Source of the DNA: Macrostomum lignano | Taxonomy: Eukaryota | DNA: 64,000 bases | Direction: 5' to 3' | Assembly: GCA_002269645.1 (NCBI GenBank) | Contig: NIVC01000984.1 | Coordinates: 433,202-497,201 of the forward strand | Shown here: piece after piece, positions 23,880-44,919 of the stretch | Layout of the letters: each line of letters opens with the position of its first letter | Numbering within the stretch: position 1 is the stretch's first letter | Position numbers and translations under genes: made by a program | The notes under the pieces: generated by a model | The model's database searches: none | Seen by the model: the letters and a program-made list of their open reading frames with translations, nothing else | What the model was told of the DNA's origin: nothing

Positions 23880-26800
23880 ATGCTACTGGCAGGGATTTTA
23901 GCACAGCTGCTCCTAGCAACCAATGCGGCGGAACCTGTCGCCGATGACGCGTCTGTCGATGAGCAGATCATCCGGATGCTGAATCTCACCAACGGCGGCT
24001 ATGTCAAAGGCGCCAGTCCGAGACCGATCAATGGCACGGCCGTCGTTGTGACCATCATGATTGAGATAGTCAAGCTCATTGATGTCGTAAGTAGAGCCGG
24101 TTTGTCCGGATTTGCGCTAAATCATCGCATTCTCATTTGTTAATTTATTTGTGCTCTTTACAGGACATGGTCAAGCAGTTCATTGTGCTGGAGAACAGAG
24201 TTTCCATGGTAAGCAGTCTGTTAAACATGCACTGACTCTCATGCCACCTCACTCTCTGACTCTCATGCCAACCACCACCCATGACTCTCGTGCCACCCTC
24301 ACCCCTGACTCTCATGCCACCCTCACCCCTGACTTTCATGCCAACCACCACCCATGACTCTCGTGCCACCCTCACCCCTGACTCTCATGCCACCTCACTC
24401 TCTGACTCTCATGCCAACCACCACCCATGACTCTCGTGCCACCCTCACCCCTGACTCTCATGCCACCCTCACCCCTGACTCTCATGCCAACCACCACCCA
24501 TGACTCTCGTGCCACCCTCACCCCTGACTCTCATGCCACCTCACTCTCTGACTCTCATGCCAACCACCACCCATGACTCTCGTGCCACCCTCACCCCTGA
24601 CTCTCATGCCACCCTCACCCCTGACTCTCATGCCACCTCACTCTCTGACTCTCATGCCACCCTCACCCCTGACTCTCGTGCCACCCTCACAATCCCTGAC
24701 TCTCATGCCACCCTCACCCCTGACTCTCATGCCACCTCACCCCCTGACTCTCATGCCACCCTCACAATCCCTGACTCTCATGCCACCTCACCCCCTGACT
24801 CTCATGCCACCCTCACAATCCCTGACTCTCATGCCACCCTCACAATCCCTGACTCTCATGCCACCCTCACAATCCCTGACTCTCATGCCACCCTCACCCC
24901 TGACTCTTATGCCACCCTCACAATCCCTGACTCTCATGCCACAAGCCTCACTCCCTGACTCTCATGCTACAAGCCTCACCCCTGACTCTCATGCCACAAG
25001 CCTCATCCCCTGACTCTCATGCCACAAACCTCACCCCTGACTCTCATACCACCCTCTCCCCTGACTCTCATGCCACAAACCTCACCCCTGACTCTCATGC
25101 CACAAACCTCACCCCTGACTCTCATACCACCCTCTCCCCCTGACTCTTATGCCACAAACCTCACCCCTGACTCTCATACCACCCTCTCCCCCTGACTCTT
25201 ATGCCACAAACCTCACCCCTGACTCTCATACCACCCTCTCCCCTGACTCTTATGCCACAAACCTCACCCCTGACTCTCATACCACCCTCTCCCCCTGACT
25301 CTTATGCCACAAACCTCACCCCTGACTCTCATACCACCCTCTCCCCCTGACTCTTATGCCACAAACCTCACCCCTGACTCTCATACCACCCTCTCCCCCT
25401 GACTCTTATGCCACAAAGCTCACCCCTGACTCTCATACCACCCTCTCCCCTGACTCTTATGCCACAAAGCTCACCCCTGACTCTCATACCACCCTCTCCC
25501 CCTGACTCCCATGCCAGCCTCACTTCCCAAACACAGCCTTCTCGTTACTTCCAAGCACACATACAAGCATACACCTTCCTCATCGATCTATTTGCATCAA
25601 CCTTGGGACAACCTTCCAACCCGCAGCCTCACTCCAAAGCCAACGTGTTGACTCATCAATCATTTCTGCCACACTGATGTCAATACAACAGAACTGGACA
25701 GACCCCCGACTAGCCTGGAAAGGAATCGCCAGACCGGAACTGGCCGCAGTTGGCGCCATCTACGCGCCTCTGGATTGGCTGTGGACACCTGACATCAGCG
25801 TTAGCCAGCCGTGAGTTTGATAACTATCCTACTTATCTATTTGCTCCGAATGGTGTCTAAAACTGACAGGCTCTGGGCATCCATTAGCAATATTTGACCA
25901 CCCATGCGGCTTGACAGACACTTTAAAGACACTTTACTTTAAAATGGTGCGGCTTATAATTAAATCCACTTTGGAGACTGTGTCAGACATTGGTGGGTGC
26001 CGCTTGTAATTTATGCCATCAACTTTCACACATCGCACGGCTGGGATTCTTTATTGACTTCTTATTCAATACTAATTTTTGTGTTTCTACTCGTATCTTT
26101 ATTTCCGAGTGTTCCTATATCCTTTTCTCATCTGTATTCCTATCCTTATCTCACCTGTATTTATATCCATATCTCACCTGTATTCCTAGCCTTATCTCAC
26201 CTGTATACCTATCCTTATCTCACCTGTATTCCTATCCTTATCTCACCTGTATTCCTATCCTTATCTCACCTGTATTCCTCTCCTTATCTCACCTGTATTC
26301 CTAGCCTTATCTCACCTGTATTCCTATCCATATCTCACCTGTATTCCTCTCCTTATCTCACCTGTATTCCTAGCCTTATCTCGCCTGTATTCCTATCCTT
26401 ATCTCACCTGTATTCCTATCCTTATCTCACCTGTATTTATATCCATATCTCACCTGTATTCCTAGCCTTATCTCACCTGTATACCTATCCTTATCTCACC
26501 TGTATTCCTATCCTTATCTCACCTGTATTCCTATCCATATCTCACCTGTATTCCTCTCCTTATCTCACCTGTATTCCTAGCCTTATCTCACCTGTATTCC
26601 TATCCATATCTCACCTGTATTCCTCTCCTTATCTCACCTGTATTCCTAGCCTTATCTCGCCTGTATTCCTATCCTTATCTCACCTGTATTCCTATCCTTA
26701 TCTCACCTGTATTTATATCCATATCTCACCTGTATTCCTAGCCTTATCTCACCTGTATACCTATCCTTATCTCACCTGTATTCCTATCCTTATCTCACCT

Positions 26801-29158
26801 GTATTCCTATCCATATCTCACCTGTATTCCTCTCCTTATCTCACCTGTATTCCTAGCCTTATCTCACCTGTATTCCTATCCATATCTCACCTGTATTCCT
26901 CTCCTTATCTCACCTGTATTCCTAGCCTTATCTCGCCTGTATTCCTATCCTTATCTCACCTGTATTCCTATCCTTATCTCACCTGTATATTCATATCCTT
27001 ATCTCACCTGTATACCTATCCTTATCTCACCTGTATTCCTATCCTTATCTCACCTGTATTCCTCTCCTTATCTCACCTGTATTCCTATCCATATCTCACC
27101 TGTATTCCTCTCCTTATCTCACCTGTATTCCTAGCCTTATCTCACCTGTATTCCTATCCTTATCTCACCTGTATTCCTATCCTTATCTCACCTGTATTTA
27201 TATCCATATCTCACCTGTATTCCTAGCCTTATCTCACCTGTATACCTATCCTTATCTCACCTGTATTCCTATCCTTATCTCACCTGTATTCCTATCCATA
27301 TCTCACCTGTATTCCTATCCTTATCTCACCTGTATTCCTATCCTTATCTCACCTGTATTCCTAGCCTTATCTCACCTTTATTCCTATCCTTTTTTATCTC
27401 ACCTGTATTCCTAGCCTTATCTCACCTGTATTCCTATCCTTATCTCACCTGTATTCCTATCCTTATCCCACCTGTATTCCTAGCCTTATATCACCTGTAT
27501 TCCTATCCTTATCTCACCTGTATTCCTATCCTTATCTCACCTGTATTCCTAGCCTTATCTCACCTGTATTCCTATCCTTATCTCACCTGTATTCCTAGCC
27601 TTATCTCACCTTTATTCCTATCCTTTTTTATCTCACCTGTATTCCTATCCTTATCTCTCCTGCACTTCTACGAGTATCCTTATTTTCCTTGTGCCCGAAC
27701 TTCACAACCATAGCCTGAACATTTCCAGTGTGGAGATTCGCAACCACGATCAGAGCAAACTGCTAGCCGAGATCAGCTCAGACGGTCAGGTGCAAACCAA
27801 GCTGGCATTCGGCTTAACAAAAAAATGCAACATGCAGCTGGCCAGCTTTCCGTTTGACAAACAGCAGTGCAATTTCAGCATGGCCTCGGGCCAGAGACCG
27901 CCCAATTCGCTGCGGCTCAGAGTGGTGCGAAGCATCGCTATTGACCTATCGATTCGGTTTCTCCGCAGCAACGAGTACTGCGTCACTGCCGTTGACTCGA
28001 TTCTGAAATGGGTCTATTCTAGTTACCACCAGATGGAGGTTATCATTACTTTTAAGGTACAGACTTTTAGTTGACTGACGACTGCATTGTTATAACGCAA
28101 ATATTTTGTTTCAATTTCTGGCCAAATATTTACACTCAACACTCCAGAGACTGCCGATGTACTACGTCATAGTGCTCATCATCCCCAGCGCCCTCATCCT
28201 CGCCACCTGCATCTTCGGCTTTCTCCTGCCAGCGGACTCGGGCGACCGACTGGCACTGAATGTGGCCATCCTGCTGTCAATGAGTGTGTTCCTGCAGCTG
28301 GCGGGCAGCATCACTCCTGCTCAGAGCGAGTCTGTTCCAGTGCTCAGTGAGTCCAAGTGTATGGCTATTGATGTGTGCAGTGCTGTGCTGTGCTGTGCTG
28401 TGGTGTGCTGTGCTGTGCTGTATTGTGCTGTGCTGTGCTGTGCTGTGCTGTGCTGTGCTGTATTGTGCTGTGCTGTGCTGTGCTGTGCTGTGCTGTGCTG
28501 TGCTGTGCTGTGCTGTGCTGTGCTATGCAGCTACACTGAGTCAAGCCTGTCTCTGCCCATCCCCAGCCTGGTACTTCACGGTGGCCATGGCTGTGACCGC
28601 TCTGAGCACAATCGGCAGCATAGTTGTGCACCTGTGCTACAGGAGAGCTGCATCGCGGGAGGCTGTGAGCAACCCAGTGCTGAGGCTGCTGTTCCTCAAC
28701 CGCCTGTGCGGCTGGAAGAACACTGTGGTGAGACGAGCTAAGAGTTCTGCTTGTAAATTTGTTATTTAGCGCATTTTAGATTAATTAGCAGAGATTCTGG
28801 ACTTTTACATGGCAATGGTTCTGACTTCCTAAATCTGATGTGTACTCTGTCTGGAGCTCCTGAGTTCGAGCCCCATGCCTGCCTCTAAATTTTCACCTGA
28901 GCATTTCATTCCGCCCCAAAGCAGGCCGATGACGACTCCGCCTGGGCTGACCAGGTCGGCAAGCAAACGAGCGTCGCCCCAGCAACGACTTCCATGGAAA
29001 CTGCCGAGTGGCGTCAAATCGGTCGCATCATCGATCGGCTGCTGGCCTTCGGCGCGATCGTTGCTTCAGCTGGCATTCTGATCTGTCTGGCTCTCACCGC
29101 GGCGGGGAGCGGCGACTGCGAGCCCGCTTTGAGAAAAATAAGATTTTCTGAATTCTGA
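23880..29158 (+). CDS. nAChR-like Cys-loop ligand-gated ion channel, gene A, 435 aa; exons 23880-24086, 24164-24208, 25692-25810, 27714-28056, 28148-28346, 28567-28727, 28925-29158
   Basis: Signal peptide; WTDPRLAW, WLWTPDI, Cys-loop CNMQLASFPFDKQQC, M1-M2 FLLPADSGDRLAL, M3, M4 EWRQIGRIIDRL; AATAAA at 29303-29308. Confidence 0.9.
24230..25520. repeat. 24-27-bp minisatellite (ctgactctcatgccaccctcaccc)n in gene A intron 2
   Basis: Tandem units whose composition shifts along the array. Confidence 0.95.
26120..27660. repeat. 23-bp minisatellite (atctcacctgtattcctatcctt)n in gene A intron 3
   Basis: About 65 units. Confidence 0.95.
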
Positions 29159-29329
29159 TTCCGGCTCAATCATCGGACACCGTGCCTGATCGCTGACGCC
29201 TGCTTACTGAGCTCCTCTGTTCTATGAAGCTGCATCTTTCTAATAATCCTCTGTCATCGATATTATCTGGATATTTATTAATTTTCCTGATATGCTATAG
29301 GAAATAAACTCTCCCAGTAGTTTTAGGTT

Positions 29330-29745
29330 TGAATCTTAGTGAGTCCTTTAATGGTCCTAGGTTCGAATCCATATGGTTGATCCTATAATAGTCCTAGGTT
29401 CGAATCCATATAGTTGATCCTATAATAGTCCTAGGTTCGAATCCATATAGTTGATCTTATAATAGTCCTAGGTTCGAATCCGTATAGTTGATCCTATAAT
29501 AGTCCTAGTTTTGAATCCATATAGTTGATCCTATAATAGTCCTAGGTTCGAATCCATATAGTTGATCCTATAATAGTCCTAGGTTCGAATCCATATAGTT
29601 GATCCTATAATAGTCCTAGGTTCGAATCCTACTTAGTGAGTTCCAAAATTGTCCTAGGTTCGAATCCTGCTTATTGCATCCTATAATGGTCCTTGGTTCG
29701 AATGCTGCTTACCTCACCTTATCATAGTCTCAGGTTCGAATCCTA
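29330..29745. repeat. 37-bp minisatellite carrying the Pol III B-box consensus GGTTCGAATCC
   Basis: Unit ctataatagtcctaggttcgaatccatatagttgatc; 9 exact GGTTCGAATCC copies and 3 variants. Confidence 0.9.
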
Positions 29746-31005: not shown

Positions 31006-31266
31006 CCAACTGTCTAAAGTCAACAAACTCAGGATGTTTGCGTGCGTGTCTGAGCATTGTTATTATTCGGCAAACAGAACTGCTGGATTAATTACTTAAG
31101 CCCAGCTCAGATGCTGATCAGCCAAATCAAATGAGCCCCCCCTCTCTGTATTTGCGCAATTTTTTATGGAGCCAAACTGTCTGACTGCTTGCTAACTGAT
31201 AACTGGCTATGAATATTAATAGTTTATTCTGCAGCACTGGAGCCCGGAATTAGTCCAGCCTCGCTG

Positions 31267-34200
31267 ATGAAGCCTCCTCGAGCACTGACTCACCGGGCAG
31301 CCGGCCTGCTGCAAATGCTGCTCGCGCTCGCTTGGGTTCTGACTTCGGCCGGGCAATCCAGGAAGTCCAACCAGGAGAGAATTGTCGAGCTGCTGAACCT
31401 CACCTCCGGCTACTGCAAGGGCGCGGCGCCGCCTCCAGACAATGGCACAGCGAATGTTGTCATTGTGTCCATTAAAGTTGTTCGATTGAGCAGCGTGGTG
31501 AGTGCAGCTTGTGCATCTTGTGCTCAACTCTACCTTTGTGTAATAAAGCTGTTGCTGCTGCCATTCAGGATATTGTGAAACAGCAAGTGTCCATTGACCT
31601 CTGGATGATACTGGTAAGCCATCGTTTACATCTCAGTGTGTGCACCTCAGCTCAATCAAATCTCATAGGTATCTCACCTAAATCAACTCTCATAGGTATC
31701 TCACCTAAATCAAATCTCATAGGTATCTCACCTCAACCAAATCTCATATGCATCTCAGCTCAATCGAATTTCATATGCACCTCAGGTCAACCAAATCTCA
31801 TATGCATCTCACCTCAATCAACTCTCATAGGTATCTCACCTCAATCAACTCTCATAGGTATCTCACCTCAACCAAATCTCATAGGTATCTCACCTCAATC
31901 AAATATCATAGGTATCTCACCTCAATCAAATCTCATAGGTATTTCAGCTCAATCAAATCTCATAGGTATCTCGTCTCAATCAAATCTCATATGTATCTCA
32001 GCTCAATCGAATCTCATATGCATCTCAGCTCATTCAAATCTCATATGCATCTCAGCTCAATCAAATCTCATATGCAGTTACGAGCATAGCAATGTGCTAT
32101 TAATAAAAAAATTTATTCAGAGATGGACAGATGCCCGATTAGCCTGGAATGACACAAGCGATGAAAGCTTAGCCAAGGTTGAGAAAATCTTCGTGCCGAC
32201 TGACTGGCTGTGGCTGCCCGATGTGACCGTGGACCACCCGTAAGTACATGCATCATGTAACTGTGTATGTTTATCATGTAGTTGCGTGTGTGTATCATGT
32301 AACTGTTTATGTGTATCATGTAGTTGCGTATGTGTATCATGTAACTGTGTATGTGTATCATTTAGTTGCGTATGTGTATTATGTAACTGTATATGTGTAT
32401 CATGTAGTTGCGTATGTGTATCATGTAGCTGTGTATGTGTATTATTTAACTGTATATGTGTATAATGTAACTAACTGTGGTTGTGTTTTAGAGTTTCGTA
32501 TGAGTAACATGTAGTTCTGTATGTGTTTCATGTAACTGTGTATGTGTATCATGTACCGGTAGTTGCGTATGTGTATCATGTAACTGTTTATGTGTATCAT
32601 GTAGTTGCGGATGTGTATCATGTAACTGTGCATGTATCATGTAGCTGTGCATGTATCATGTAGCTGTGCATGCATCATGTAGTTTTGCATGTATCATGTA
32701 GATGTGCATGTATCATGTAGATGTGCATGTATCATGTAGATGTGCATGTATTATGTAGATGTGCATGTATCATGTAGATGTGCATGTATCATGTAACTTT
32801 AAAAGCAATGCCTTGTCATTGTGGCGAACACAGAGCAATACCTACTCCTGCAACGCAGAGTCGAAATCCGCAATTATGAGGCCAATAAACACTTGTCTAT
32901 TGTCTACCAAAATGGAATTGTAATAATCGGCATTCCATACGGAGTAACCAGCAGGTGTCCGATGAACATGGCGTATTTTCCCTTCGACTCCCAGCAGTGT
33001 AACGCAACCTTCTCCTCGGCTGTGAAAACGCCTGCGGATTTGCAGCTTGAATTGGGACAGGAGGCAAACAAAACCTATGCCGATCTTAACAAGGAGAGCA
33101 ACGAATTCTGCATCAGCCACATTGAAACTTCAAAAGTATCTATCTATGAATATTACGAAAAAGTTCAGGTTTCAATCAGCTTCAAGGCAAGTAGCAGATG
33201 AGTTGAACATCTGTGCTTTACCAGCTGCATCACTCAGCCTCTCACTCCCCACCCCATTGCACAGCAGTCTCTGTGCTAAGTGCCCGCTCAGCCTCCCGCT
33301 CCCCACCCCATTGCACAGCAGTCTCTGTGCTGAGTGCCCGCTCAGCCTCCCGCACCCCACCCCTTTGCAGAGGCGGCCCCTCTACTACATCATCGTGCTC
33401 ATCATCCCCAGCGCCCTCATCCTCGCCACCTGCATCTTCGGCTTTCTCCTGCCAGCGGACTCGGGCGACCGACTGGCACTGAATGTGGCCATCCTGCTGT
33501 CAATGAGTGTGTTCCTGCAGCTGGCGGGCAGCATCACTCCTGCTCAGAGCGAGTCCGTTCCAGTGCTCAGTGAGTCAGAGTGTATGGCTATTGATGTGTG
33601 CTGTGCTGTGCTGTGCTGTGCTGTGCTGTGCTGTGCTGTGCTGTGCTGTGCTGTGCTGTGCTGTGCTGTGCTGTGCTGTGCTGTGCTGTGCTGTGCTGTG
33701 CTGTGCTGTGCTGTGCTGTGCTGTGCTGTGCTGTGCTGTGCTGTGCTGTGCTGTGCTGTGCTGTGCTGTGCTGTGCTGTGCTGTGCTGTGCTGTGCTGTG
33801 CTGTGCTGTGCTGTGCTGTGCTGTGCTGTGCTGTGCTGTGCTGTGCTGTGTTGTGCTGTGCTGTGCTGTGCTGTGCTGTGCTGTACTGTGCTGTGCTGTG
33901 CTGTACTGTGCTGTGCTGTGCTGTGCTGTGCTGTGCTGTGCTGTGCTGTGCTGTGCTGTGCTGTGCTGTGCTGTGCTGTGCTGTGCTGTGCTGTGCTGTG
34001 CTGTACTGTGCTGTGCTGTGCTGTGCAGCTACACTGAGCCAAGCCTGTCTCTGCCCATCCCCAGCCTGGTACTTCACGGTGGCCATGGCTGTGACCGCTC
34101 TGAGCACAATCGGCAGCATAGTTGTGCACCTGTGCTACAGGAGAGCTGCATCGCGGGAGGCTGTGAGCAGCCCAGTGCTGAGGCTGTTGTTCCTCAACCG

Positions 34201-34357
34201 CCTGTGCGGTTTTCAAGGCAGCGACCCCGCGGATGCGTGGCGTCACATCGGCTCTGTAGTGGACCGCCTGCTGATTGCCTGCGCTGTCCTGTCCGCTGCA
34301 GCTGTTGGCGGGCTGCTTGTCGTCACAGCTGCCAATAGCGGCTTTGTAGCTTGCTGA
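31267..34357 (+). CDS. nAChR-like Cys-loop channel, gene B, ~404 aa; exons 31267-31497, 31569-31613, 32121-32239, 32859-33186 (GC donor), 33371-33569, 34065-34357
   Basis: Signal peptide; WTDARLAW, WLWLPDV, CPMNMAYFPFDSQQC, same M1-M3 as gene A, M4 AWRHIGSVVDRL. Confidence 0.88.
31630..32080. repeat. 27-bp minisatellite (ggtatctcacctcaatcaaatctcata)n in gene B intron 2
   Basis: Tandem units. Confidence 0.9.
32250..32800. repeat. AT-rich minisatellite built on tatcatgtag/tatcatgtaa in gene B intron 3
   Basis: Units of ~19-21 bp (gtgtatcatgtagttgcgtat, gtgcatgtatcatgtagat). Confidence 0.9.
33599..34026. repeat. (CTGTG)n pentanucleotide tract in gene B intron 5; homologous tracts at ~28375-28525 (A), ~37919-38150 (C), ~44263-44427 (D)
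   Basis: Direct reading; near-identical flanks in all four paralogs. Confidence 0.97.
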
Positions 34358-34439
34358 TGGATTTGACACCGACCTCTTACTAACCGTGACACACTAGTAA
34401 AATCATCTGAATGGCATCATAAAATTATAACTGTTTTTA

Positions 34440-36130: not shown

Positions 36131-38650
36131 ATGCTGAGACAGGGGATTATTCTGGCGTTGACATTGACGTTGCTAGCCCACGAGGCCGCCGTCTGCTCGG
36201 CGAAGGAGCCTTCCAGGATGTCAACCGAAGAGAGGATCATCCGGCTGCTGAACATCACCTCCGGCTACTACAAGGTGGCGGCACCTCCGCCAGACAACGG
36301 CACGGCCAATGTAATCAAGTTTAGAACTAAACTCATCAGAATCAGCAGCGTGGTGAGTGCCGCTGAGGGTGCAGTATTGTATATCGTATTTTAACTCCCC
36401 AAACTTACAGGTTTTTGCTCAAACTTTTACTCAAAAATGCGATAGCCACTGTAATCGGTTTAAAAGCAGTTAAATCAGTCTGAAAAAACGCTTTGTAGGA
36501 TGTTGTGAATCAGCTAGTGTCCTTGGATCTCTGGATAATGATGGTGAGTTTGACTCCTAGATAATCCACCTTTAAGTTACCTGAATGAGTAGCAGCTGCA
36601 CATCTACCGCAACACCTGCCTCGGCCGCCCTCGAACAACTCTGAATTTTCAGTTTTGGACAGATTCGCGACTCGCCTGGAACGAGACCGACGATCCCAAA
36701 CTGGCCAAGTTTGAGAAGATCTTTCTACCAACAGACTATGTGTGGCTTCCGGACTTGAGTCTGAGCCATCCGTGAGTTCTGTTTGCCAATTTAATATGGC
36801 ATTGATTTTTATATTGGTTGATAATAAAGCCGATCAGGTGGAGAGTCCCCTTTCGCTGCAGCCTATCAAAAAAGCCTATCAAAGCCACTGCCACAGAGCT
36901 GCACTCGGCCATAGACAATAAAGCCAACCAAAGCCACTGCCACAGAGCTGCACTCGGCCATAGACAATAAAGCCAACCAAAGCCACTGCCACAGAACTGC
37001 ACTCGGCCATAGACAATAAAGCCTATCAAAGCCACTGCCACAGAGCTGCACTCGGCCATAGACAATAAAGCCAACCAAAGCCACTGCCACAGAGCTGCAC
37101 TCGGCCATAGACAATAAAGCCAACCAAAGCCACTGCCACAGAGCTGCACTCGGCCATAGACAATAAAGCCAACCAAAGCCAATGCCACAGAACTGCACTC
37201 GGCCATAGACAGTCCAGTCTTTTATCAAATACTCTCGTAAATATTTTGACAGGGTTGACGTCAAAAGCTTTGAAACCAACAAATTCTTGGTTGACGTGAG
37301 CTCGAACGGTAGGATGAAACTGGAAACGCCGCTCGGCATAACCATCAAGTGCCCGCTGAAGATGCGCGACTTTCCATTTGACACGCAAGTTTGCCAGTTT
37401 TCTTTCTCGTCAGCGGCGAAGAAGCAGACGCTTTTGCAGCTTGAGATAAAAAGTGGGCTGCCTATCAACTACAGCGAGATAAACCTGCAGAACAATGAGT
37501 ACTGTGTTACTAGCGTGCGCTCAGTCATTATTGACTTCAGCACCCAATTTCCCCAATTCAAGAAGCTTTTGGTTACAGTTGAATTCGAGGTAAAATACCG
37601 CATGTTTGAGAGGTGCTGGGTACTCACTCATTGCACAGCAGTCTCTGTTCTGACTACCCGCTCAGCCTCCCGCTCCCCATCCCATTGCAGAGGCGGCCCC
37701 TCTACTACGTCATCGTGCTCATCATCCCCAGCGCCCTCATCCTCGCCACCTGCATCTTCGGCTTTCTCCTGCCAGCGGACTCGGGCGACCGACTGGCACT
37801 GAATGTGGCCATCCTGCTGTCAATGAGTGTGTTCCTGCAGCTGGCGGGCAGCATCACTCCTGCTCAGAGCGAGTCTGTTCCAGTGCTCAGTGAGTCCAAG
37901 TGTATGGCTATTGATGTGTGCTGTGCTGTGCTGTGCTGTGCTGTGCTGTGCTGTGCTGTACTGTGCTGTGCTGTGCTGTGCTGTGCTGTGCTGTGCTGTA
38001 CTGTGCTGTATTGTGCTGTGCTGTACTGTGCTGTGCTGTGCTGTGCTGTGCTGTGCTGTGCTGTGCTGTGCTGTATTGTGCTGTGCTGTGCTGTGCTGTG
38101 CTGTGCTGTGCTGTGCTGTGCTGTGCTGTGCTGTGCTGTGCTGTGCTGTGCAGCTACACTGAGTCAAGTCTGTCTCTGCCCATCCATAGCCTGGTACTTC
38201 ACGGTGGCCATGGCTGTGACCGCTCTGAGCACAATCGGCAGCATAGTTGTGCACCTGTGCTACAGGAGAGCTGCATCGCGGGAGGCTGTGAGCAACCCGG
38301 CGCTGAGGCTGCTGTTCCTCAACCGCCTGTGCGGCTGGTCGGTGCGTGCTCTCTCATATGTACTTAGATTTTCCGACGTTGGTCTTACTTTATCTGCTGA
38401 CAGCTTGTCGAATCTTTAAATTGCTCTCATTTTTCGCCAGAATTACCGAGTCAGCAGCGCCACATCGAAGGCCGCGGCCGCCTCATCATCCAGCAGCAGC
38501 CTCGCCAGCGTCCAGGACGGCTGCCGCGATCCTGGAGACGAGTGGCTGCATGTGAGCTGCGTGCTGGACAGACTGATGCTGGTCTGCGTTGTGAGCCTCT
38601 CCGTGGCCGTCACCGTGTTGCTGGGCGCCACCGCTAACAAGAGCAACTAG
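36131..38650 (+). CDS. nAChR-like Cys-loop channel, gene C, 427 aa; exons 36131-36352, 36499-36543, 36653-36771, 37253-37589, 37691-37889, 38190-38341, 38441-38650
   Basis: Signal peptide; WTDSRLAW, YVWLPDL, CPLKMRDFPFDTQVC, shared M1-M3, M4 EWLHVSCVLDRL; AATAAA at 38711-38716. Confidence 0.9.
36860..37212. repeat. 49-bp minisatellite in gene C intron 3
   Basis: Unit gccatagacaataaagccaaccaaagccactgccacagagctgcactcg, about 7 copies. Confidence 0.92.
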
Positions 38651-40086
38651 GCGGGGTGCTGATGACCGAGCTCATCAATTCGAGTTTAAGGACTACTAAA
38701 CTAACTCCTTAATAAACTAATACATCAGCTGTGTACCGTGCAATACTCCAGCAGCCAACACTAGCAGCTAATTATTGAACCAATAGGTCAGTTAACCAAA
38801 CTGCCGCAGCAGATATATATTACAACTATATTTTATCTTGTTAAACTATAATAATCATTTTGACGCATTGCACTTGTTTCAAGGCAACTGAAGACTGAAT
38901 CTTTCGGACTGATGTAGTTACCTCCGGAGTTGAGGGCATCGTGGGTTTTACTTGTACCTATATTAGTGAAAAACATTAGCTTCAGAATTCTTCATTCGAT
39001 TAGATTTTACGATACTGATATTGTCAAGGTTTAGCTTTCCGTGTGTCTATTACATGTAAGTGCAGTGAGTTTGAGAAGGGAGCTTTTTAAAATGAAGATG
39101 GTACTGAGTCGGAAGTATAAATGGTTTCATTAACTCCACAGTCAGAGCACGAAAGAAGCCAGACGCGAACACCTACAAGGGATCGCCAGGGACTTCTAGA
39201 GCTGGCACCACAGTAATGCTATTTTTAGCAGTCCCTGCAAACAGACAAAGGGGAGGCAAATCAACGCGAGAAGAAGGCCTTAAAGCCAGATCGGGGGGAG
39301 GTGGGTGCGCCAGAGAGACGGAGACGGGGCGCGACGGAGGCCGGAGAGAAAGAACATCCGACCGGTCACAAACCACACCGTAAGCGTCACGCACTCTTAC
39401 GGATAATATTTGATGAACAGCTAGAGTTGACAAATTGGACAATTGCATGACAATACGGCCGGGGCACTGGCTAGGTGGCTGGAAGCAAACAATTGAGTAG
39501 CACTTAAGCAAATTGATTCGGTGCATCAGTGACGAAGAGAGCCGAGTCAATAGAATCTAATTAGGCAACTCTGAACAATATCCAATAGTTGAAGCAACTC
39601 AGAAAACTAACTGTTCTTCTCGGAATCAAACCCATGTGTCTGACGGACGACAGCACGAAAGTTTATAAGCTGCACGGACTCTCATTAATTAAAGTTTGAG
39701 TCGCCGAATTGAAGTGGCGCGCAGCTGAACTCACTCTAGTCTGCTTCAAGTTGAGTACCTTGGACGCTGCCAAGTACATATACGGATTACGCACTCGCTC
39801 ACACTGGGTGTACAGCGGCCCTGACTTTCTCATCCGTTAGGCAGTGAACTGCAAGGGCACCGGAAAGTTCACTTTCTCGAAAAATGTTGCCATGGTCACT
39901 TCGCTTGCTCACAGCTTAAACAAATTCAACTCTGAAGCTTCCCAGCGATAGCTTCTACTAATTCAATATTTGAGCACCATGCTAACCCGGCCCTTTGTGT
40001 GCTCTGCTCAGTGCTTGGTTTAACTGTCGTGACTGTTAATTAAAGCCTTGCAGTCGCTGAGCAAAGTGAGTCGGGGAAACGGCAGG

Positions 40087-40197
40087 CCAATATGCCACCA
40101 ACTGCTTTATCAGCGTCGCATTCACTCAGCTCAGCAATCGCAATCAGCTTATTGGTTATAGCAAAAGGCTGCATTTGCTCTAGTATGTATATATAAG
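40087..40197 (+). promoter_or_regulatory. Candidate CCAAT/TATA core promoter of gene D
   Basis: ccaat at 40087, attgg at 40151, tatatataag at ~40188-40197, about 120 nt before the ATG at 40317. Confidence 0.35.
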
Positions 40198-40316
40198 AGG
40201 CTTGTCTACATCAGTTCATGCTCTGCTTACTTAGTTTGGTGAACTGCTAGCAGTCTGGCGCTGTGATACTTGGCAAATACTGCTGTGTGAGCCTGCGCTC
40301 CTACCCGAATAGATCG

Positions 40317-43300
40317 ATGCGGACTCAACAATACTCAGACCTCTGCTGCAGACTCTGCGTAGCAGTGCTCGTCTTGCTGTCATCAGGAGTGCATTCTCAA
40401 ACAGAAGAAGCGGCATCTGGAGAGGAGCAGGTGATCCGATGGCTGAACCTGACCGCCAGGTACTGCAAGGAGGCGGCTCCGCCGCAGGACAATGGCACCG
40501 CTACCTTGGTTACTGTGGACTGCCTTGTCAACGAGCTGCTTGAAGTGGTGAGTTGGCACCAGTAAATACCATAGATGTCCAAAAATAGTGATGTAGCGCT
40601 AGCGCTAATTCAATTAACCCCTGTCCGATAACGATGCTCCATCTTGTGCTGTTCCAGAATGATGTGAAGCAGTTGTTTTCTCTTGACAGCTACATAATGC
40701 TGGTAAGCTTGATGAGTTATTAGAAATATTGATGTTACATTCATGCTGAAAAAAACCTTTGTAACTCTTCCGCCCCCAAGCAATGGACTGACAGGAGACT
40801 GGCCTGGGACAGGTCGGGCAATGCTGAGCTGCTGACAACTGACGAAATCTTCCTGCCACTCGACATGATTTGGGTGCCGGATGTCATTGTGATGAGGCCG
40901 TGAGTGCGACATCAGATTTCAGTTTATTAGCTCCATAGCTCAAGTGCAAAAGTTGCTCTTATCTTCTCTTCTCGTCCGGGATCGCGTCTCAAACTCCTCG
41001 AAATCCCACAGCTCCACGTTGGATGAAGGAGCGAACCATTGCAAAATCCGTTCAGACGGCACAACTGGCCAATCACCAGATTCGCTCCTGATAAAAATTG
41101 ATTCAAAATTAGTCGATACTACTGAATTGCCAACAATCGAAAGTAGTATTCAGCAAGGACTACTAAAGTAGAAGGACATGGTAGAACTACGGAGATCACG
41201 CCTCCCCTGAAGAGAGAATTCGGTCGATACAATATGCCCTGAAAACTACTGATTTCCCATGAATCCATGACCCAGCAGAAGTCCAAAAAAGCAATCCTAG
41301 AAATCCTATCGCATTGTCTGCACAGTGTACAGGTATGCAAAATATTAGTGACTTTAGTTGATATCGGTATAGAATGAAACTAATCCATTCTGCCAGAGCC
41401 TCAGAAGTTGGCCTTTCATGGCTGAGTATCGCCTCAGGCCAATCGCACGGAATCGAACCAACTATACATGCATACATTTTTCGCAAGAGGCAGCTGCTCA
41501 GCCTCTCAATTGCTTCATCAGTTGTTTACTATTAAAGTGCAGCCGAGCTCCGGCAGCCCGTCTCCACTCTGTCCAGCTCTCGGCCGCAGCAATTCGCTGC
41601 ATTTTGCATTCCTGCCACCTGCAGCCAGCAGCAACAGACAGGCTTGAGCACGCACTGAATGGCCTGAGAGCCATCGAATTATGATATGCGAGCATGGTCA
41701 CAATGGCTTTTTAAGACAAAACGCAGTCGAGCTGTAGGCAGCGGGTGGTTAGAGAGGCCAGCTTAACCTCTCTGTATCTCTGCTCGCTCGCTATTCTCAG
41801 GCCAGCTCACCGCTCTGTCAGCCTCCCTGCAGTTTGGCAGACTCCGGGGGCAACCAGCAGTGCTGTACTCGGTCTGTTTTGAGTAGTGAGCTGAATGGAG
41901 CTGCATTCTAGCTAGACTTATTTATTATCTCAGGCAGGAGTTGCGGGGGTTGGGTGGTTCGAGAGGCCAGTATGGGGTGATTGCGAACTCGAGTAGTTTT
42001 CTCTTTGCGGGCTTTTATGACGCCAGACTGTCGCACTGCGAGTGCTGAGCTGGGTGGGGCCGTTCCAGATGAAGCTTGGAGATTCATTTAGCGATGAGGC
42101 TGCTGAGATGACCAGCGCAAAGCTGAGCTGTCTGAGGCTGCAGTGGCAGCTGCTCCCGAAAGAGTTGCAGCCCCAGCCTTGCACAATGGAGACTCTGCAT
42201 TGTGCTTTAGCACCCTGCCTGCCCCCTCACTGCACCTTCGCTTCTGTGCTCAGAGATGACGGGCGGAGGCTGGGCTGCCAGCCAGCTGCATTTTTTTGAT
42301 AGTTTAGCGCTTTCTCGAAGCATGAGAAAACAAGCGTTTATTGAGCGGAGTCTGCATGATCTGAGCTGGGATCTGATAGAGAACAAAGAAGCTGAGCTTT
42401 CGAGTTGACAAATCTCAGCAGTGAAATGCTGAAGTGTCGGTCACCAAGTGCAAAATGCAATAAAAAAGCCAGGCAGCCGCAGTGCACAGATAAACCGTGT
42501 GAAATCCAAAATCAGCCTATATGTGAGTCCCGCACTGTCCTGGGCAGGCCGAGAGCTGGACAGAATAGAGACGGGCTGCCAGAGCTCGGCTGCACTTTAA
42601 TAATAAACAACTGATGAAGCAATTGAGAGGCTGAGCAGCTGCCTCTTGCGAAAAATGTATGCATGTATAGTTGGTTCGATTCCGTGCGATTGGCCTGAGG
42701 CGATACTCAGCCATGAAAGGCCAACTTCTGAGGCTCTGGCAGAATGGATTAGTTTCATTCTATACCGATATCAACTAAAGTCACTAATATTTTGCATACC
42801 TGTACACTGTGCAGACAATGCGATAGGATTTCTAGGATTGCTTTTTTGGACTTCTGCTGGGTCATGGATTCATGGGAAATCAGTAGTTTTCAGGGCATAT
42901 TGTATCGACCGAATTCTCTCTTCAGGGGAGGCGTGAGATAGGAAGTTCTCTTTTTTCAGCATAAAAATTGTTATTGCTTTCGATAGGAGGCAGACGCAAT
43001 GCTCATCTTTGGATAAGATCTCTATTGATATTCGTAAAGCTCTTTGTTCGGAAAATTGGGATTCTATGTTAATTTCATATTCTACGTACATTTCCTGTAC
43101 CTAAAAAATCATTAAAATGCATGGCACGGCTCGAATCTTTAGTTTTAGCTCGTATGCATCTATTTTATCATTTCTGTTACACATATTGTTACACAGTAAG
43201 CCAAGGACAACTCAAAGATGAGCATTGGGTCTGCCTCCTATTGAAAGCAATAACAATTTTTGAGCTGAAAAAATGAAAACTTTCTATCTACATAGTGTAT

Positions 43301-44919
43301 TTCTCGGCGAACAGTGGCCTTCAAAACATTTTGTATAGATTTAGCTCGTACAGTGTCGCGTCCTGTACGTTGCTTTAGTTGTCCGTGGTATTCAGTATTA
43401 GAAATATTTGGTGTTTTTGCGGCTTATAATTCAAACCTCTGACTGGTACTTTACTTATAATGATAAGTAAAAAGATATGAAGCGATGTATCTTTCATGAT
43501 CTTTGGCTGGCTACTAACTCAAATATGATTCACTAAAGCTTATAAAAAAGTATACGATGATTATTGCACTTTTGACACCAACTCACTTAAAAGCTACTCA
43601 ACCTCTCTCATAGCATCGACATTCGCAGCTTCGAGAAGAACAGGCTGCTAGCGAAGGTGCTCGCGAATGGCCAGGTCACGGCACTGCTGTCCTACGGCAC
43701 AACCAACAAGTGCAAGATGAAGCTGAACGATTTCCCGTTCGACTCCCAGCACTGCTCAATCTACCTGTCCTCGGTAGCGAAGGGTAGTAAATACATCAGG
43801 CTGAAGGCTTTACCAAGACCCAATGACCAGCAGATTGTCGTGACTGCTAGCCAAAATAATGAATTCTGCGTCACCAATGTCAATACATCCTGGAATAGTA
43901 AGATGGGACAACACGACATAGTGAATATCACTGTCAGCTTCAAGGTGAGATAGAAACTAGATACTCGTATATAAAGGTCCCCGAGGCTCGGCATTAAGTG
44001 CCCGCTCAGTCTCCCGCTCCCCATCCCTTTGCAGAGGCGGCCCCTCTACTACGTCATCGTGCTCATCATCCCCAGCGCCCTCATCCTCGCCACCTGCATC
44101 TTCGGCTTTCTCCTGCCAGCGGACTCGGGCGACCGACTGGCACTGAATGTGGCCATCCTGCTGTCAATGAGTGTGTTCCTGCAGCTGGCGGGCAGCATCA
44201 CCCCTGCTCAGAGCGAGTCTGTTCCAGTGCTCAGTGAGTCAGAGTGTATGGCTATTGATGTGTGCTGTGCTGTGCTGTGCTGTGCTGTGCTGTGCTGTGC
44301 TGTGCTGTGTTGTGCTGTGCTGTGCTGTGCTGTGCTGTGCTGTGCTGTACTGTGCTGTATTGTGCTGTGCTGTGCTGTGCTGTGCTGTGCTGTATTGTGC
44401 TGTGCTGTGCTGTGCTGTGCTGTGCTATGCAGCTACACTGAGCCAAGTCTGTCTCTGCCCATCCCCAGCCTGGTACTTCACGGTGGCCATGGCTGTGACC
44501 GCTCTGAGCACAATCGGCAGCATAGTTGTGCACCTGTGCTACAGGAGAGCTGCATCGCGGGAGGCTGTGAGCAGCCCAGTGCTGAGGCTGCTGTTCCTCA
44601 ACCGCCTGTGCGGCTGGAAGAACACTGTGGTGAGCATAAAGTTCTGAGTCTTTAATAACTCACTCGGATGCAGTTAGCAACTGTCGCACAATTTTTGCAG
44701 CAAAGCGTTGAGAACTGCAAGGAGAGCAACCAAGCCCAATCGCTCGAGTCGGTTTCCATGACAACAATCAAAACCAGTCCGGGATCCGAGTGGCAGCAGA
44801 TTGGCTCAGCGATTGACCGCCTGCTGATAATCTGCTCCGTCAGCTGCTCTGTGGCCGTCTTGCTGCTGATTTTTGTCACCGCGGTCAAGAACGCTTCTAG
44901 CTGGTGTCCAACGTATTAG
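40317..44919 (+). CDS. nAChR-like Cys-loop channel, gene D, 434 aa; exons 40317-40547, 40658-40702, 40781-40899, 43614-43944, 44035-44233, 44469-44629, 44701-44919
   Basis: Signal peptide; WTDRRLAW, MIWVPDV, CKMKLNDFPFDSQHC, shared M1-M3, M4 EWQQIGSAIDRL. Confidence 0.9.
41197..42935. mobile_element. Non-autonomous foldback DNA transposon with 389-bp TIRs (41197-41585, 42547-42935), CAC..GTG ends, 4-bp TSD AGAT; Chapaev/CMC-like
   Basis: Arms are near-perfect reverse complements (about 4 mismatches seen); agat at 41193-41196 and 42936-42939; no transposase recognised inside. Confidence 0.78.
42936..43297. mobile_element. Older MITE with ~85-bp imperfect TIRs, interrupted by the foldback element (left tip at ~41185-41196)
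   Basis: 42936-43011 is the reverse complement of 43213-~43288; the match continues left of the foldback (aactacggagat vs cactatgtagat). Confidence 0.6.

What the first reader, a model, noticed from the sequence alone, without database searches (positions are those of the whole stretch)
23880..43944. All four ectodomains have lost the acetylcholine-binding signature: candidate chemosensory channels
Seen: no vicinal CC in loop C in any copy. The loop B Trp is absent (MASGQR, FSSAVK, FSSAAK, LSSVAK) and so is the loop A Tyr (PDISVSQP, PDVTVDHP, PDLSLSHP, PDVIVMRP). A loop D aromatic is present only in B, C (W) and D (Y). The Cys-loop FPFD and the nAChR-type M1-M2 are intact. Known: the nAChR aromatic box needs these residues, and cephalopod chemotactile receptors are tandem nAChR derivatives that lost them. 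Inference: an independent expansion of orphan ligand-gated or pH/chemical sensors.
Basis: partly seen in the sequence, partly recalled or inferred. Interest (0 to 1): 0.75.

Follow-up and report, generated by a model that had tools for sequence, protein, structure and literature searches.

The report
Orphan flatworm channels sharing one pore
Four neighbouring genes of the flatworm Macrostomum lignano encode acetylcholine-receptor-like channel subunits that lack the residues needed to bind acetylcholine; ongoing gene conversion keeps their pore-forming segment almost identical while their ligand-binding halves have diverged to saturation.

Summary
The window is Macrostomum lignano contig NIVC01000984.1. 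It carries four intact, tandem, + strand Cys-loop channel genes (A-D) with 6-7 exons each. All four lack the loop C vicinal Cys-Cys, the loop B Trp (Gly, Ala, Ala, Val) and the loop A Tyr (Ser, Asp, Ser, Met). The loop D aromatic is Arg, Trp, Trp, Tyr. The Cys-loop, gating elements and a cation-type M2 are intact.

They belong to a Macrostomum-expanded clade of nAChR/5-HT3-type subunits that has lost the principal-face aromatic box, so the expansion is independent of the cephalopod chemotactile receptors.

The M1-M2 exon, the following intron and the M3 exon are 95-99% identical in DNA among all four genes (dS 0.02-0.07). The ectodomain and M4 exons are saturated (dS 0.6-3.5). On a second genomic copy, gene C carries gene B's state at 12 of 12 diagnostic sites in this block. 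This is ongoing, domain-restricted gene conversion.

"Lost ACh signature" and "independent expansion" hold. "Chemosensory" is untested: the residue pattern fits accessory or complementary subunits equally well, and only D has a transcript-derived model. Orphan nAChR-like expansions are a known kind, so interest is moderate.

The parts
23880..29158 (+). Gene A (430 aa). Exons 23880-24086, 24164-24208, 25692-25810, 27729-28056, 28148-28346, 28567-28727, 28925-29158 (stop included).
   Evidence: open frame and GT-AG at every junction. The last acceptor agrees with UniProt model P0003. Pfam PF02931 2.7e-26 and PF02932 5.1e-17.
31267..34357 (+). Gene B (404 aa). Exons 31267-31497, 31569-31613, 32121-32239, 32859-33186, 33371-33569, 34065-34357 (stop included). 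Intron 4 has a GC-AG donor (gcaagt). There is no intron between M3 and M4, and the M3-M4 loop is only about 33 aa.
   Evidence: The GC donor and the open frame are conserved on the second genomic copy L002. Unannotated in GenBank and UniProt.
36131..38650 (+). Gene C (427 aa). Exons 36131-36352, 36499-36543, 36653-36771, 37253-37589, 37691-37889, 38190-38341, 38441-38650 (stop included).
   Evidence: The last acceptor agrees with UniProt model P0002. Intact on L002.
40317..44919 (+). Gene D (434 aa). Exons 40317-40547, 40658-40702, 40781-40899, 43614-43944, 44035-44233, 44469-44629, 44701-44919 (stop included).
   Evidence: The protein is identical to GenBank PAA50078.1/PAA53391.1/PAA73977.1, named BOX15_Mlig024351. 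The GenBank annotation is derived from RNA-seq transcripts.
24164..24208 (+). 45-nt micro-exon of A (DMVKQFIVLENRVSM). Loop D position is Arg81.
   Evidence: the only AG/45-nt ORF/GT candidate..
31569..31613 (+). 45-nt micro-exon of B (DIVKQQVSIDLWMIL). Loop D position is Trp89.
36499..36543 (+). 45-nt micro-exon of C (DVVNQLVSLDLWIMM). Loop D position is Trp86.
40658..40702 (+). 45-nt micro-exon of D (NDVKQLFSLDSYIML). Loop D position is Tyr89. This exon is missing from UniProt model A0A1I8GLY6.
27826..27897 (+). A: Cys-loop (Cys157-Cys171, FPFD) and loop B (MASGQR: Gly178 at the Trp position, Arg180).
32956..33027 (+). B: Cys-loop (Cys165-Cys179) and loop B (FSSAVK: Ala186, Lys188).
37350..37421 (+). 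C: Cys-loop (Cys162-Cys176) and loop B (FSSAAK: Ala183, Lys185).
43711..43782 (+). D: Cys-loop (Cys165-Cys179) and loop B (LSSVAK: Val186, Lys188).
28145..28732 (+). Gene-conversion block in A: M1-M2 exon, intron, M3/MX exon.
   Evidence: 95.0% identity to D over 603 nt, intron included..
33309..34213 (+). Gene-conversion block in B. It starts about 60 nt upstream of the M1 exon and ends at ...CTGTGCGG.
37629..38338 (+). Gene-conversion block in C.
   Evidence: On L002 this block is B-type at 12/12 diagnostic sites.
43997..44634 (+). Gene-conversion block in D.
28374..28528 (+). (TGTGC)31 microsatellite in the M2-M3 intron of A.
33597..34026 (+). (TGTGC)86 microsatellite in the M2-M3 intron of B.
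37917..38151 (+). (TGTGC)47 microsatellite in the M2-M3 intron of C.
44261..44430 (+). (TGTGC)34 microsatellite in the M2-M3 intron of D.

Best explanation
Shown: the locus is a tandem array of four intact paralogous genes of Macrostomum lignano. They encode subunits of pentameric, cation-type (nAChR/5-HT3 branch) Cys-loop channels. They belong to a Macrostomum-expanded clade that has lost the principal-face aromatic box (loop A Tyr, loop B Trp, loop C Cys-Cys). None of them can therefore bind acetylcholine by the canonical cation-pi mechanism on its own (+) face.

Shown: the genes are mosaics. The ectodomain exons and the M4 exon are anciently diverged. The M1-M2 exon, the intron after it and the M3/MX exon are kept near-identical by recurrent interlocus gene conversion that is still going on. 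One genomic copy of C carries a complete B-type block.

Inferred: the four subunits share one pore and one set of transmembrane interfaces (M1-M3) but carry four different ligand-binding modules. Divergence is greatest in loops C, F, B and E. The most likely mechanism is a set of non-cholinergic, orphan ligand-gated cation channels that can co-assemble freely with each other. Their conductance and selectivity would be fixed by the shared pore, and their ligand specificity set by which ectodomains are combined. The ligand, and the choice between an external chemosensory and an internal transmitter or pH role, remain unknown.
For: Gene integrity:
- Four open spliced frames with signal peptides, C-x13-C Cys-loop with FPFD, pre-M1 Arg, 9' Leu, M2-M3 Pro and a pre-M4 W..DRL motif.
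- Pfam LBD and TM domains score above the curated cut-offs.
- The D model equals a transcript-derived GenBank protein that is present on three contigs.
- B, C and D are intact on a copy that is 1-2% diverged. Outside the block there are 8 nonsynonymous and 12 synonymous differences, P=0.0009 against a 3:1 expectation.
- Ectodomain pN is 0.33-0.42 against pS 0.62-0.74.

Channel class:
- Best solved-structure sequence hits are 5-HT3A (8e-39), alpha7 (5e-38) and beta2.
- Foldseek top hits are nAChR subunits.
- The M1-M2 linker LPADSGDR aligns with alpha9 LPADSGEK.

Loss of the ACh box:
-.
- Most M. lignano paralogues also lack it: P0028/P0030, P0029, P0033 and P0036 have Ile/Ala at the Trp position. 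P0043 keeps the Trp.

Gene conversion:
- Exon nucleotide identity is 54-69% in the three large ectodomain exons (55-80% in the 45-nt micro-exon), against 95-99% in the M1-M2 and M3 exons. The flanks of the enclosed intron are 90-100% identical.
- dS is 0.02-0.07 in the block, 1.3-3.5 in the ectodomain and 0.6-1.9 in M4.
- L002 copy C differs from window C at 15 of 419 block sites but from B at only 3. It carries all 12 B/C-diagnostic sites as B, while its flanks are 98.2-99.7% C-like.

Diversified binding loops:
- Mean pairwise identity is 0.09 in loop C, 0.16 in loop F and 0.29 in loop B. It is 0.59 in the Cys-loop and 0.72 in the pre-beta1 motif.
Against: - There are no functional data, and no expression data beyond the transcript-derived model of D.
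- A, B and C have no GenBank model. This could mean very low expression, or removal by the annotation's repeat filter.
- High variability of loops C and F is typical of any pLGIC paralogue set. It would also follow from relaxed constraint if these faces bind nothing.
- A retained loop D Trp/Tyr together with a lost principal face is the pattern of accessory or complementary nAChR subunits.
- Co-assembly among A-D is inferred only from the identical M1-M3. Gene conversion can be a neutral by-product of residual similarity rather than a selected trait.
- The AlphaFold monomer was of modest quality (pLDDT 64.5), so no pocket analysis was possible.
Confidence: 0.45

Rival explanations
1. Accessory or complementary subunits. 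A-D do not form receptors by themselves. They fill non-agonist or (-) face positions in heteropentamers whose principal face is supplied by a canonical alpha-type M. lignano nAChR subunit encoded elsewhere. The receptor would still be ACh-gated.
For: - The pattern in B, C and D (principal-face residues lost, loop D Trp/Trp/Tyr kept) and in A (both faces lost) mirrors vertebrate muscle gamma/delta/epsilon and beta1 (established knowledge; residues).
- The best Foldseek hit is the muscle beta subunit 9gu0_B, although only marginally ahead of alpha7.
Against: - Nearly the whole M. lignano clade (at least 5 further paralogue units) lacks the principal face. That is many accessory subunits for a hypothetical partner.
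- The shared M1-M3 is specific to these four genes. A word-based search found it in no other M. lignano protein. No alpha partner with a matching TMD is evident.
- Loop E and loop F of the (-) face are not conserved among the four.
Confidence: 0.28
2. These are peripheral chemosensory channels expressed in sensory neurons that detect external chemicals or pH. They would be a flatworm analogue of the cephalopod chemotactile receptors.
For: - CRs are nAChR-derived, form homo- and heteropentamers, do not bind ACh and have diversified pockets (review PMC11526382).
- Here there is a lineage-specific tandem expansion, loss of the ACh box and maximal divergence in the pocket loops.
- A, B and C have no model in the whole-animal, transcript-derived annotation. 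This would fit expression in few cells.
Against: - No expression or ligand data exist.
- Only four genes share this pore. The M. lignano clade recovered here is about ten units, which is small for a chemoreceptor repertoire.
- Ectodomain substitution patterns show overall purifying selection. dS is saturated, so positive selection cannot be tested.
- Arg/Lys at loop B +2 in all four hints at a polar or anionic ligand rather than CR-type greasy ligands (inference).
Confidence: 0.18
3. Decaying or non-functional duplicates. The missing binding residues simply reflect loss of function.
For: - A, B and C lack transcript-derived models.
- B has a non-canonical GC donor.
Against: - All frames and splice sites are intact in the window and on the diverged copy L002, including the GC-AG site.
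- There is an excess of synonymous over nonsynonymous differences between copies, P=0.0009.
- Gating motifs are conserved.
- The loss is clade-wide, and therefore old, yet the genes persist.
- The D protein is 100% identical on three contigs.
Confidence: 0.06
4. The near-identical M1-M3 block is an assembly artefact, or is explained by purifying selection alone.
For: The M. lignano assembly is redundant and repeat-rich.
Against: - The same mosaic is present on three independent contigs.
- The identity includes the intron and synonymous sites, which selection on the protein cannot explain.
- Each block has private substitutions and its own microsatellite length.
Confidence: 0.02

Closest known systems
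Cephalopod chemotactile receptors (octopus and squid CRs; van Giesen 2020, Allard 2023, Kang 2023, as summarised in PMC11526382)
   Same: They are derived from nAChR-type subunits and are lineage-specific expansions. They have lost ACh binding, form cation channels and have diversified pocket residues.
   Different: - The origin is phylogenetically independent: A-D group with M. lignano paralogues.
- CR function and sensory expression are demonstrated. Here neither is known.
- No TMD-restricted gene conversion is reported for CRs, to my knowledge.
Expanded orphan nAChR-like receptors of other spiralians (bivalve expansions, Jiao 2019 PMC6896357; Alvinella Alpo4, PMC10338036)
   Same: They are nAChR/5-HT3-like, lack the loop C Cys-Cys, occur in tandem arrays, have no known ligand and do not respond to ACh or 5-HT (Alpo4).
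   Different: - Alpo4 keeps the whole aromatic box: F103, W159, Y199, Y205, W65. A-D have lost loops A and B.
- Bivalve expansions are largely intron-poor retrogenes. A-D keep 6-7 exons, including a 45-nt micro-exon.
- Flatworms were not covered in those surveys.
Non-alpha / accessory nAChR subunits (vertebrate muscle beta1, gamma, delta, epsilon; neuronal alpha5/beta3) - from established knowledge
   Same: They have no Cys-Cys. The principal-face loop A Tyr and loop B Trp are lost, while the loop D Trp is kept (B and C; Tyr in D). A resembles beta1 in lacking both faces.
   Different: - Those subunits have long M3-M4 loops and defined alpha partners. A-D have 33-65 aa loops and no known partner.
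- A-D are not orthologous to them. They fall in a Macrostomum-specific clade.
Non-cholinergic members of the nAChR-like branch in nematodes (proton-gated PBO-5/PBO-6, betaine-gated ACR-23, choline-gated DEG-3/DES-2) - from my own knowledge
   Same: They have a cationic nAChR-type pore with an ectodomain re-tuned to another small agonist or to protons.
   Different: There is no specific sequence relationship. DEG-3 is only a distant PDB hit (E 2e-30). The ligand here is unknown.
Domain-restricted gene conversion in clustered receptor genes (for example protocadherin variable exons, where membrane-proximal and cytoplasmic parts are homogenised and ligand-binding parts stay diverse) - from my own knowledge
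   Same: Tandem paralogues keep one part homogenised while the recognition domain diverges. The tract boundaries are sharp.
   Different: - It is a different protein family.
- Here the tract spans two exons plus an intron and ends within 0-60 nt of exon borders.
- I found no report of this for pentameric ligand-gated channels.

Membership tests
Cys-loop pentameric ligand-gated ion channel superfamily | Neur_chan_LBD and Neur_chan_memb domains above the Pfam gathering scores | tested here: met
   PF02931 scores 92.8-115.9 bits (cut-off 26) and PF02932 scores 60-67 bits (cut-off 28.1) for all four.
Cys-loop pentameric ligand-gated ion channel superfamily | C-x13-C Cys-loop with FPFD, four TM helices, pre-M1 Arg, M2 9' Leu | tested here: met
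   The AlphaFold model shows a beta-sandwich plus M1-M4 helices.
Cation-selective nAChR/5-HT3 branch | Acidic residue at M2 -1' in a GE[KR]-type linker, with no Pro-Ala-Arg anion motif; closest relatives are nAChR/5-HT3 | tested here: met
   - The linker is LPADSGDR, with Asp instead of Glu at -1'. It aligns with alpha9 LPADSGEK.
- The best PDB hits are 5-HT3A, alpha7 and beta2. Foldseek agrees.
Agonist-binding (alpha-type) nAChR subunit | Vicinal Cys-Cys at the tip of loop C | tested here: not met
   absent in all four, and loop C is about 5 residues shorter.
Agonist-binding (alpha-type) nAChR subunit | Loop B Trp (cation-pi) and loop A Tyr | tested here: not met
   Gly/Ala/Ala/Val at the Trp position and Ser/Asp/Ser/Met at the Tyr position.
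Agonist-binding (alpha-type) nAChR subunit | Two loop C Tyr residues | tested here: inconclusive
   The second Tyr position is Tyr/Tyr/Phe/His. The first falls in an alignment gap.
Complementary-face (non-alpha) nAChR subunit | Loop D Trp retained while the principal face is lost | tested here: inconclusive
   Trp in B and C, Tyr in D, Arg in A. Loop E and loop F are not conserved.
Complementary-face (non-alpha) nAChR subunit | Obligate co-assembly with an alpha-type partner | not testable with these tools
   Needs co-expression or co-immunoprecipitation.
5-HT3 receptor | Loop B Trp183 and loop D Trp90 of the 5-HT pocket | tested here: not met
   alignment: 5-HT3A TFTSWLHT aligns with B TFSSAVKT. 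Only the loop D Trp is kept in B.
Cephalopod chemotactile receptors | Membership of the cephalopod CR clade | tested here: not met
   - The nearest relatives are all M. lignano paralogues (E 1e-133 to 1e-40). Next come annelid, bivalve, hemichordate, nematode and fish sequences.
- NJ clade of A-D plus M. lignano paralogues: 90/100 full length, 36/100 ectodomain only.
- No CR sequence was placed in the tree directly.
Cephalopod chemotactile receptors | Expression in sensory cells and gating by environmental ligands | not testable with these tools
   No expression record was found for Mlig024351.
Interlocus (ectopic) gene conversion between tandem paralogues | Abrupt drop of synonymous and intronic divergence inside a bounded tract | tested here: met
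   - dS is 0.02-0.07 in the tract against 0.6-3.5 outside it.
- Intron flanks are 90-100% identical, against about 50% in other introns.
- Tract borders are given.
Interlocus (ectopic) gene conversion between tandem paralogues | A copy on another haplotype or homeologue carries the donor paralogue's states across the tract, with unconverted flanks | tested here: met
   L002 copy C is B-type at 12/12 diagnostic sites, and its flanks are 98.2-99.7% C-type.

The most novel reading that the evidence does not exclude
The four genes form a modular sensor array. A common pore and assembly module (M1-M3) would be actively kept identical by gene conversion, so that any mixture of four or more very different ligand-binding ectodomains can co-assemble into heteropentamers with uniform conductance. 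This would give a flatworm a combinatorial, non-cholinergic chemoreceptor system that evolved independently of the cephalopod chemotactile receptors. Gene conversion would play the role that shared constant exons play in protocadherin or UGT1A clusters.
Probability: 0.18. Interest if true: 0.72.

Novelty: new member of a known kind. Interest (0 to 1): 0.45.

Why it matters
Lineage-specific expansions of nAChR-like subunits that no longer look cholinergic are common in invertebrates, but function is known only for the cephalopod chemotactile receptors. A flatworm clade that has lost the whole principal-face aromatic box, yet remains under purifying selection, is a clean test case for how Cys-loop receptors acquire new agonists. 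It sits in a transparent organism that is tractable by transgenesis and RNAi.

The domain-restricted gene conversion is a natural experiment. Four ectodomains with 37-48% identity are coupled to one and the same pore. Any difference in ligand response between subunits must therefore come from the ectodomain or M4. The pattern also raises the testable idea that pore identity is maintained to allow free co-assembly.

It has a practical consequence too. Phylogenies or orthology calls made on full-length sequences of such clusters will be misled by the homogenised TMD: A-D monophyly is 99/100 full length but 45/100 on the ectodomain only. In addition, the public gene models for A, C and D (UniProt) are wrong, and B has no model at all.

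Tried and rejected
I used UniProt model P0001, which is D without the micro-exon.
- The look-up of encoding contigs with P0001 found nothing. The exact D protein P0025 worked.
- Expression: "Mlig024351" is absent from the full-text library. It is also absent from the held supplements of Wudarski 2017, Grudniewska 2018 and the 2026 ploidy paper. There is no expression evidence beyond the transcript-derived model.
- The literature search for pLGIC plus gene conversion gave nothing relevant.
- The AlphaFold2 monomer of D had pLDDT 64.5 and pTM 0.50, too weak for pocket analysis. Foldseek could not discriminate among nAChR subunits or 5-HT3A: E 1e-25 to 6e-23, TM about 0.55.
- dN/dS for positive selection on the ectodomain is unusable because dS is saturated.
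- The ectodomain-only NJ tree recovers A-D and the M. lignano clade, but with weak bootstrap support (45 and 36 of 100). The full-length support (99 and 90) is inflated for A-D by the converted block.
- Rejected: protocadherin/UGT1A-style sharing of constant exons. Each unit has its own M1-M4 exons and stop codon.
- Rejected: protein-level purifying selection as the cause of TMD identity. The intron and synonymous sites are also identical.
- Rejected: assembly artefact. The mosaic is on three contigs.
- Rejected: an anion-selective SmACC-like channel. The linker is the GE[KR] type with Asp at -1'.
- Checked: a further pLGIC gene elsewhere in the window. The motif scan finds only four, all on the + strand.

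Full report
**What the window is**

The sequence is eukaryotic, with spliced genes and many micro- and minisatellites. Window positions 30317-54919 are 100% identical to Macrostomum lignano assembly Mlig_3_7 contig NIVC01000984.1. A motif scan of all six frames finds exactly four Cys-loop FPFD signatures, four identical M1-M2 linkers and four W.PD loop A motifs. All are on the + strand between 23.9 and 44.9 kb. The flanks carry unrelated genes: an ANAPC5-domain gene, a Ras/Rab GTPase and a mariner-like transposase remnant.

**Gene models**

Paralogue-to-paralogue tblastn located the conserved coding blocks. Splice junctions were then read directly. Each gene has 6-7 exons:
- signal peptide, alpha1 helix and beta1;
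- a 45-nt micro-exon (beta1-beta2 loop and beta2, carrying loop D);
- a 119-nt exon ending in loop A;
- a 328-337-nt exon carrying loop E, the Cys-loop and loops B, F and C;
- a 199-nt M1-M2 exon;
- an M3/MX exon;
- an M4 exon.

All junctions are GT-AG except one GC-AG donor in B. B also lacks the M3-M4 intron. My model of D is residue-for-residue identical to GenBank PAA50078.1/PAA53391.1/PAA73977.1, named BOX15_Mlig024351. The GenBank annotation is built from RNA-seq-derived transcripts, so the D model has independent support.

The UniProt models are faulty. D lacks the micro-exon, and A and C read through introns. B has no public model. All four pass the Pfam thresholds for Neur_chan_LBD and Neur_chan_memb.

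**Check of the observation**

A-D were aligned with genuine alpha subunits (fish and skate alpha9, an arachnid nAChRa1, a Clytia alpha3-like) and to a profile of 186 related units. The references show Trp(D)-Tyr(A)-Trp(B)-Tyr(B+2)-Tyr(C) plus Cys-Cys. The four genes show:

| Gene | Loop D | Loop A | Loop B | Loop B +2 | Loop C Tyr |
|---|---|---|---|---|---|
| A | Arg | Ser | Gly | Arg | Tyr |
| B | Trp | Asp | Ala | Lys | Tyr |
| C | Trp | Ser | Ala | Lys | Phe |
| D | Tyr | Met | Val | Lys | His |

None has the Cys-Cys, and loop C is about five residues shorter (codon coordinates). The distance from PD to FPFD is 51 residues, as I recall it for nAChRs, so no exon is missing (and direct reading). 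These features are intact: Cys-loop, pre-M1 Arg, 9' Leu, M2-M3 Pro and a cation-type linker LPADSGDR (alpha9 has LPADSGEK).

**What family it is**

- By sequence, the best solved structures are 5-HT3A (8e-39), alpha7 (5e-38) and beta2.
- By fold, a modest AlphaFold model (pLDDT 64.5) matches nAChR subunits and 5-HT3A about equally.
- An exhaustive HMMER search of 1.8 billion representatives gives only 34 hits below 1e-30.
- The best hits are other M. lignano proteins, several of them fused models of further tandem arrays (P0028, P0029, P0030, P0033, P0036, P0043, P0054).
- Sequences from Owenia, bivalves, a hemichordate, nematodes and fish "5-HT3A-like" genes follow at 23-30% identity.

The M. 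lignano paralogues share family-specific motifs: PPPDNG.AN, NE[FY]C in beta9 where nAChRs have .EW, FLNR after M3, and short M3-M4 loops. Except for P0043, they also lack the loop B Trp.

NJ trees put A-D with these paralogues: 90/100 full length, but only 36/100 on the ectodomain alone. The loss of the ACh box is therefore old and clade-wide. The expansion is Macrostomum-specific and independent of the cephalopod chemotactile receptors.

**The unexpected part: a shared pore kept by gene conversion**

Pairwise blastn between the four gene units finds essentially one strong match. It is a block of about 0.6-0.9 kb at 95-97% identity, comprising the M1-M2 exon, the next intron with its (TGTGC)n array, and the M3/MX exon.

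| Region | Nucleotide identity | dS | Amino-acid identity |
|---|---|---|---|
| Ectodomain exons | 54-69% (three large exons); 55-80% (45-nt micro-exon) | 1.3-3.5 (saturated) | 37-48% |
| M1-M2 exon | 96-99% | 0.02-0.07 (block) | 97-99% (block) |
| M3 exon | 95-99% | 0.02-0.07 (block) | 97-99% (block) |
| Unique flanks of the enclosed intron | 90-100% | - | - |
| Other introns | about 50% (unalignable) | - | - |
| M4 exon | - | 0.6-1.9 | 24-52% |

The block begins 0-60 nt upstream of the M1 exon and ends within about 5 nt of the end of the M3 exon. Selection on the protein cannot explain identical introns and synonymous sites. The mosaic is also present on three contigs, so it is not an assembly artefact.

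Direct evidence that conversion is ongoing comes from contig NIVC01003722.1 (L002), which is about 1-2% diverged from the window:
- Gene C there differs from window C at 15 of 419 unambiguous block sites, but from gene B at only 3.
- It carries the B state at all 12 sites that distinguish B from C. These include the amino-acid changes V248I, N343S and A345V.
- Its ectodomain exons, flanking introns and M4 exon remain 98.2-99.7% C-like.

A word-based search with B, which would catch any protein sharing this TMD, found only the models of A, C and D. The block is therefore private to this cluster.

**Are the genes functional?**

- All frames and splice sites, including B's GC donor, are intact on L002.
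- Outside the converted block, the two copies differ by 8 nonsynonymous and 12 synonymous substitutions in B, C and D. This gives P=0.0009 against a neutral 3:1 expectation.
- The D protein is identical on three contigs.
- Gating elements are conserved.
- Within the ectodomain, the pocket loops are the most diverged: loop C 0.09, loop F 0.16, loop B 0.29 and loop E 0.35 mean pairwise identity. The scaffold motifs are the least diverged: pre-beta1 0.72, alpha1 0.65, Cys-loop 0.59.

Decay is therefore unlikely.

**Mechanism: what is shown and what is inferred**

Shown: these are cation-type pLGIC subunits without a canonical ACh principal face, with diverged ectodomains and M4, and with an M1-M3 homogenised by gene conversion.

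Inferred: because M1-M3 forms the pore and all transmembrane subunit interfaces, the four subunits should be freely interchangeable in a pentamer and should give the same conductance. Ligand specificity would be set by the ectodomains, and the agonist is not ACh acting through a cation-pi interaction with a loop B Trp. The conserved Lys/Arg at the Tyr151 position hints at a polar or anionic ligand, but that is speculation.

Whether conversion is selected (to preserve co-assembly) or is a neutral consequence of residual TMD similarity cannot be decided here. Heteroduplex rejection would stop tracts at the unalignable flanks in either case.

**Rivals**

1. Accessory or complementary subunits of ACh-gated heteromers. 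The residue pattern (principal face lost; loop D aromatic kept in B, C and D; both faces lost in A) is that of muscle gamma/delta/epsilon and beta1. Nothing in the sequence excludes this.
2. It is compatible with the data but untested. No expression data for Mlig024351 were retrievable. The absence of GenBank models for A-C may reflect either rarity of transcripts or the annotation's repeat filter.
3. Pseudogenes. This is disfavoured, as set out above.
4. Artefact. This is rejected.

**Comparison with what is known**

Orphan nAChR-like expansions lacking the Cys-Cys tip are documented in molluscs and annelids (Jiao 2019; Alpo4). The cephalopod CRs show that such receptors can become chemosensors.

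A-D differ from Alpo4, which keeps the full aromatic box. They also differ from the bivalve expansions, which are mostly intron-poor retrogenes. Flatworms were not covered in those surveys.

Units lacking the loop B Trp also occur in nematodes, bivalves, a gastropod and fish "5-HT3A-like" genes. The loss itself is therefore not unique. Domain-restricted gene conversion is known in other clustered receptor genes, but I found no report of it for pentameric channels.

**Verdict**

These are new members of a known kind: lineage-specific orphan nAChR-like subunits. They carry one unusual and well-supported extra, a pore module shared by ongoing gene conversion. Interest is moderate at 0.45. It would rise if co-assembly and a non-cholinergic or chemosensory ligand were demonstrated.

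Noticed in passing
window 41183-42949 (intron 3 of gene D): A 1.77-kb element with 403-nt terminal inverted repeats that are 98% complementary. It is absent from the two other genomic copies of the locus, where gene D is 2860 nt instead of 4603 nt. It looks like a polymorphic foldback/TIR transposon insertion. Its ORFs have no Pfam hit.
   Followed up: partly
window 28374-28528, 33597-34026, 37917-38151, 44261-44430: A (TGTGC)n microsatellite sits in the middle of every conversion block, in the M2-M3 intron, with 31, 86, 47 and 34 units. It might act as a recombination initiator. This was not tested.
   Followed up: no
window 33187 (B intron 4 donor) and 34065-34357: Gene B uses a GC-AG intron (AAG|gcaagt), which is conserved on the diverged copy L002. 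It has lost the intron between M3 and M4. Its M3-M4 loop of about 33 aa is the shortest, against 100-270 aa in the reference nAChRs.
   Followed up: partly
window 33233-33369: A 54-nt unit covering the 3' end of B's intron 4 is repeated 2.5 times. This is the 5' edge of the conversion block, including the acceptor region, so the tract border itself has been duplicated in B.
   Followed up: no
genes A, C, D; UniProt A0A1I8GLY6 and the entries behind P0002/P0003: The public protein models are wrong. The D model lacks the 45-nt micro-exon that carries loop D. The A and C models read through introns, including the translated (TGTGC)n 'CAVLC' repeat. B is unannotated everywhere. GenBank has only D.
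   Followed up: yes
beta9 strand: window about 27970 (A), 33100 (B), 37494 (C), 43858 (D): All four genes and the other M. lignano paralogues have NE[FY]C where nAChRs have the conserved .EW. The Cys has no conserved partner in the ectodomain. Its role (free thiol, or an inter-subunit or metal site) is unexplained.
   Followed up: no
loop B +2 codons 27895-27897, 33025-33027, 37419-37421, 43780-43782: Arg/Lys replaces the nAChR Tyr151-equivalent in all four genes, although the rest of loop B is diverged. It is a possible ligand-contact residue.
   Followed up: no
window 24232-25523, 26118-27662, 31646-32072, 32252-32795, 36867-37211: Large minisatellites (periods of 21-49 nt, up to 67 copies) fill the ectodomain introns of A, B and C. 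They create long spurious ORFs in the mechanical ORF list.
   Followed up: no
window 1800-9300 (+), 10447-11373 (-), 49126-49563 (-): The flanking genes are a multi-exon gene with an ANAPC5 domain (6.7e-06), a Ras/Rab-family GTPase (4.3e-53) and a weak mariner-type transposase fragment (0.0023, below the cut-off). There is no further channel gene in the window.
   Followed up: partly
L003 (NIVC01003094.1) versus the window: L003 is 100% identical to the window across 14 of the 15 B/C/D segments tested (one mismatch in C's large ectodomain exon). The other differences are the transposon in D and repeat lengths. L002 is 1-2% diverged. This fits the redundant, neopolyploid Mlig_3_7 assembly.
   Followed up: partly
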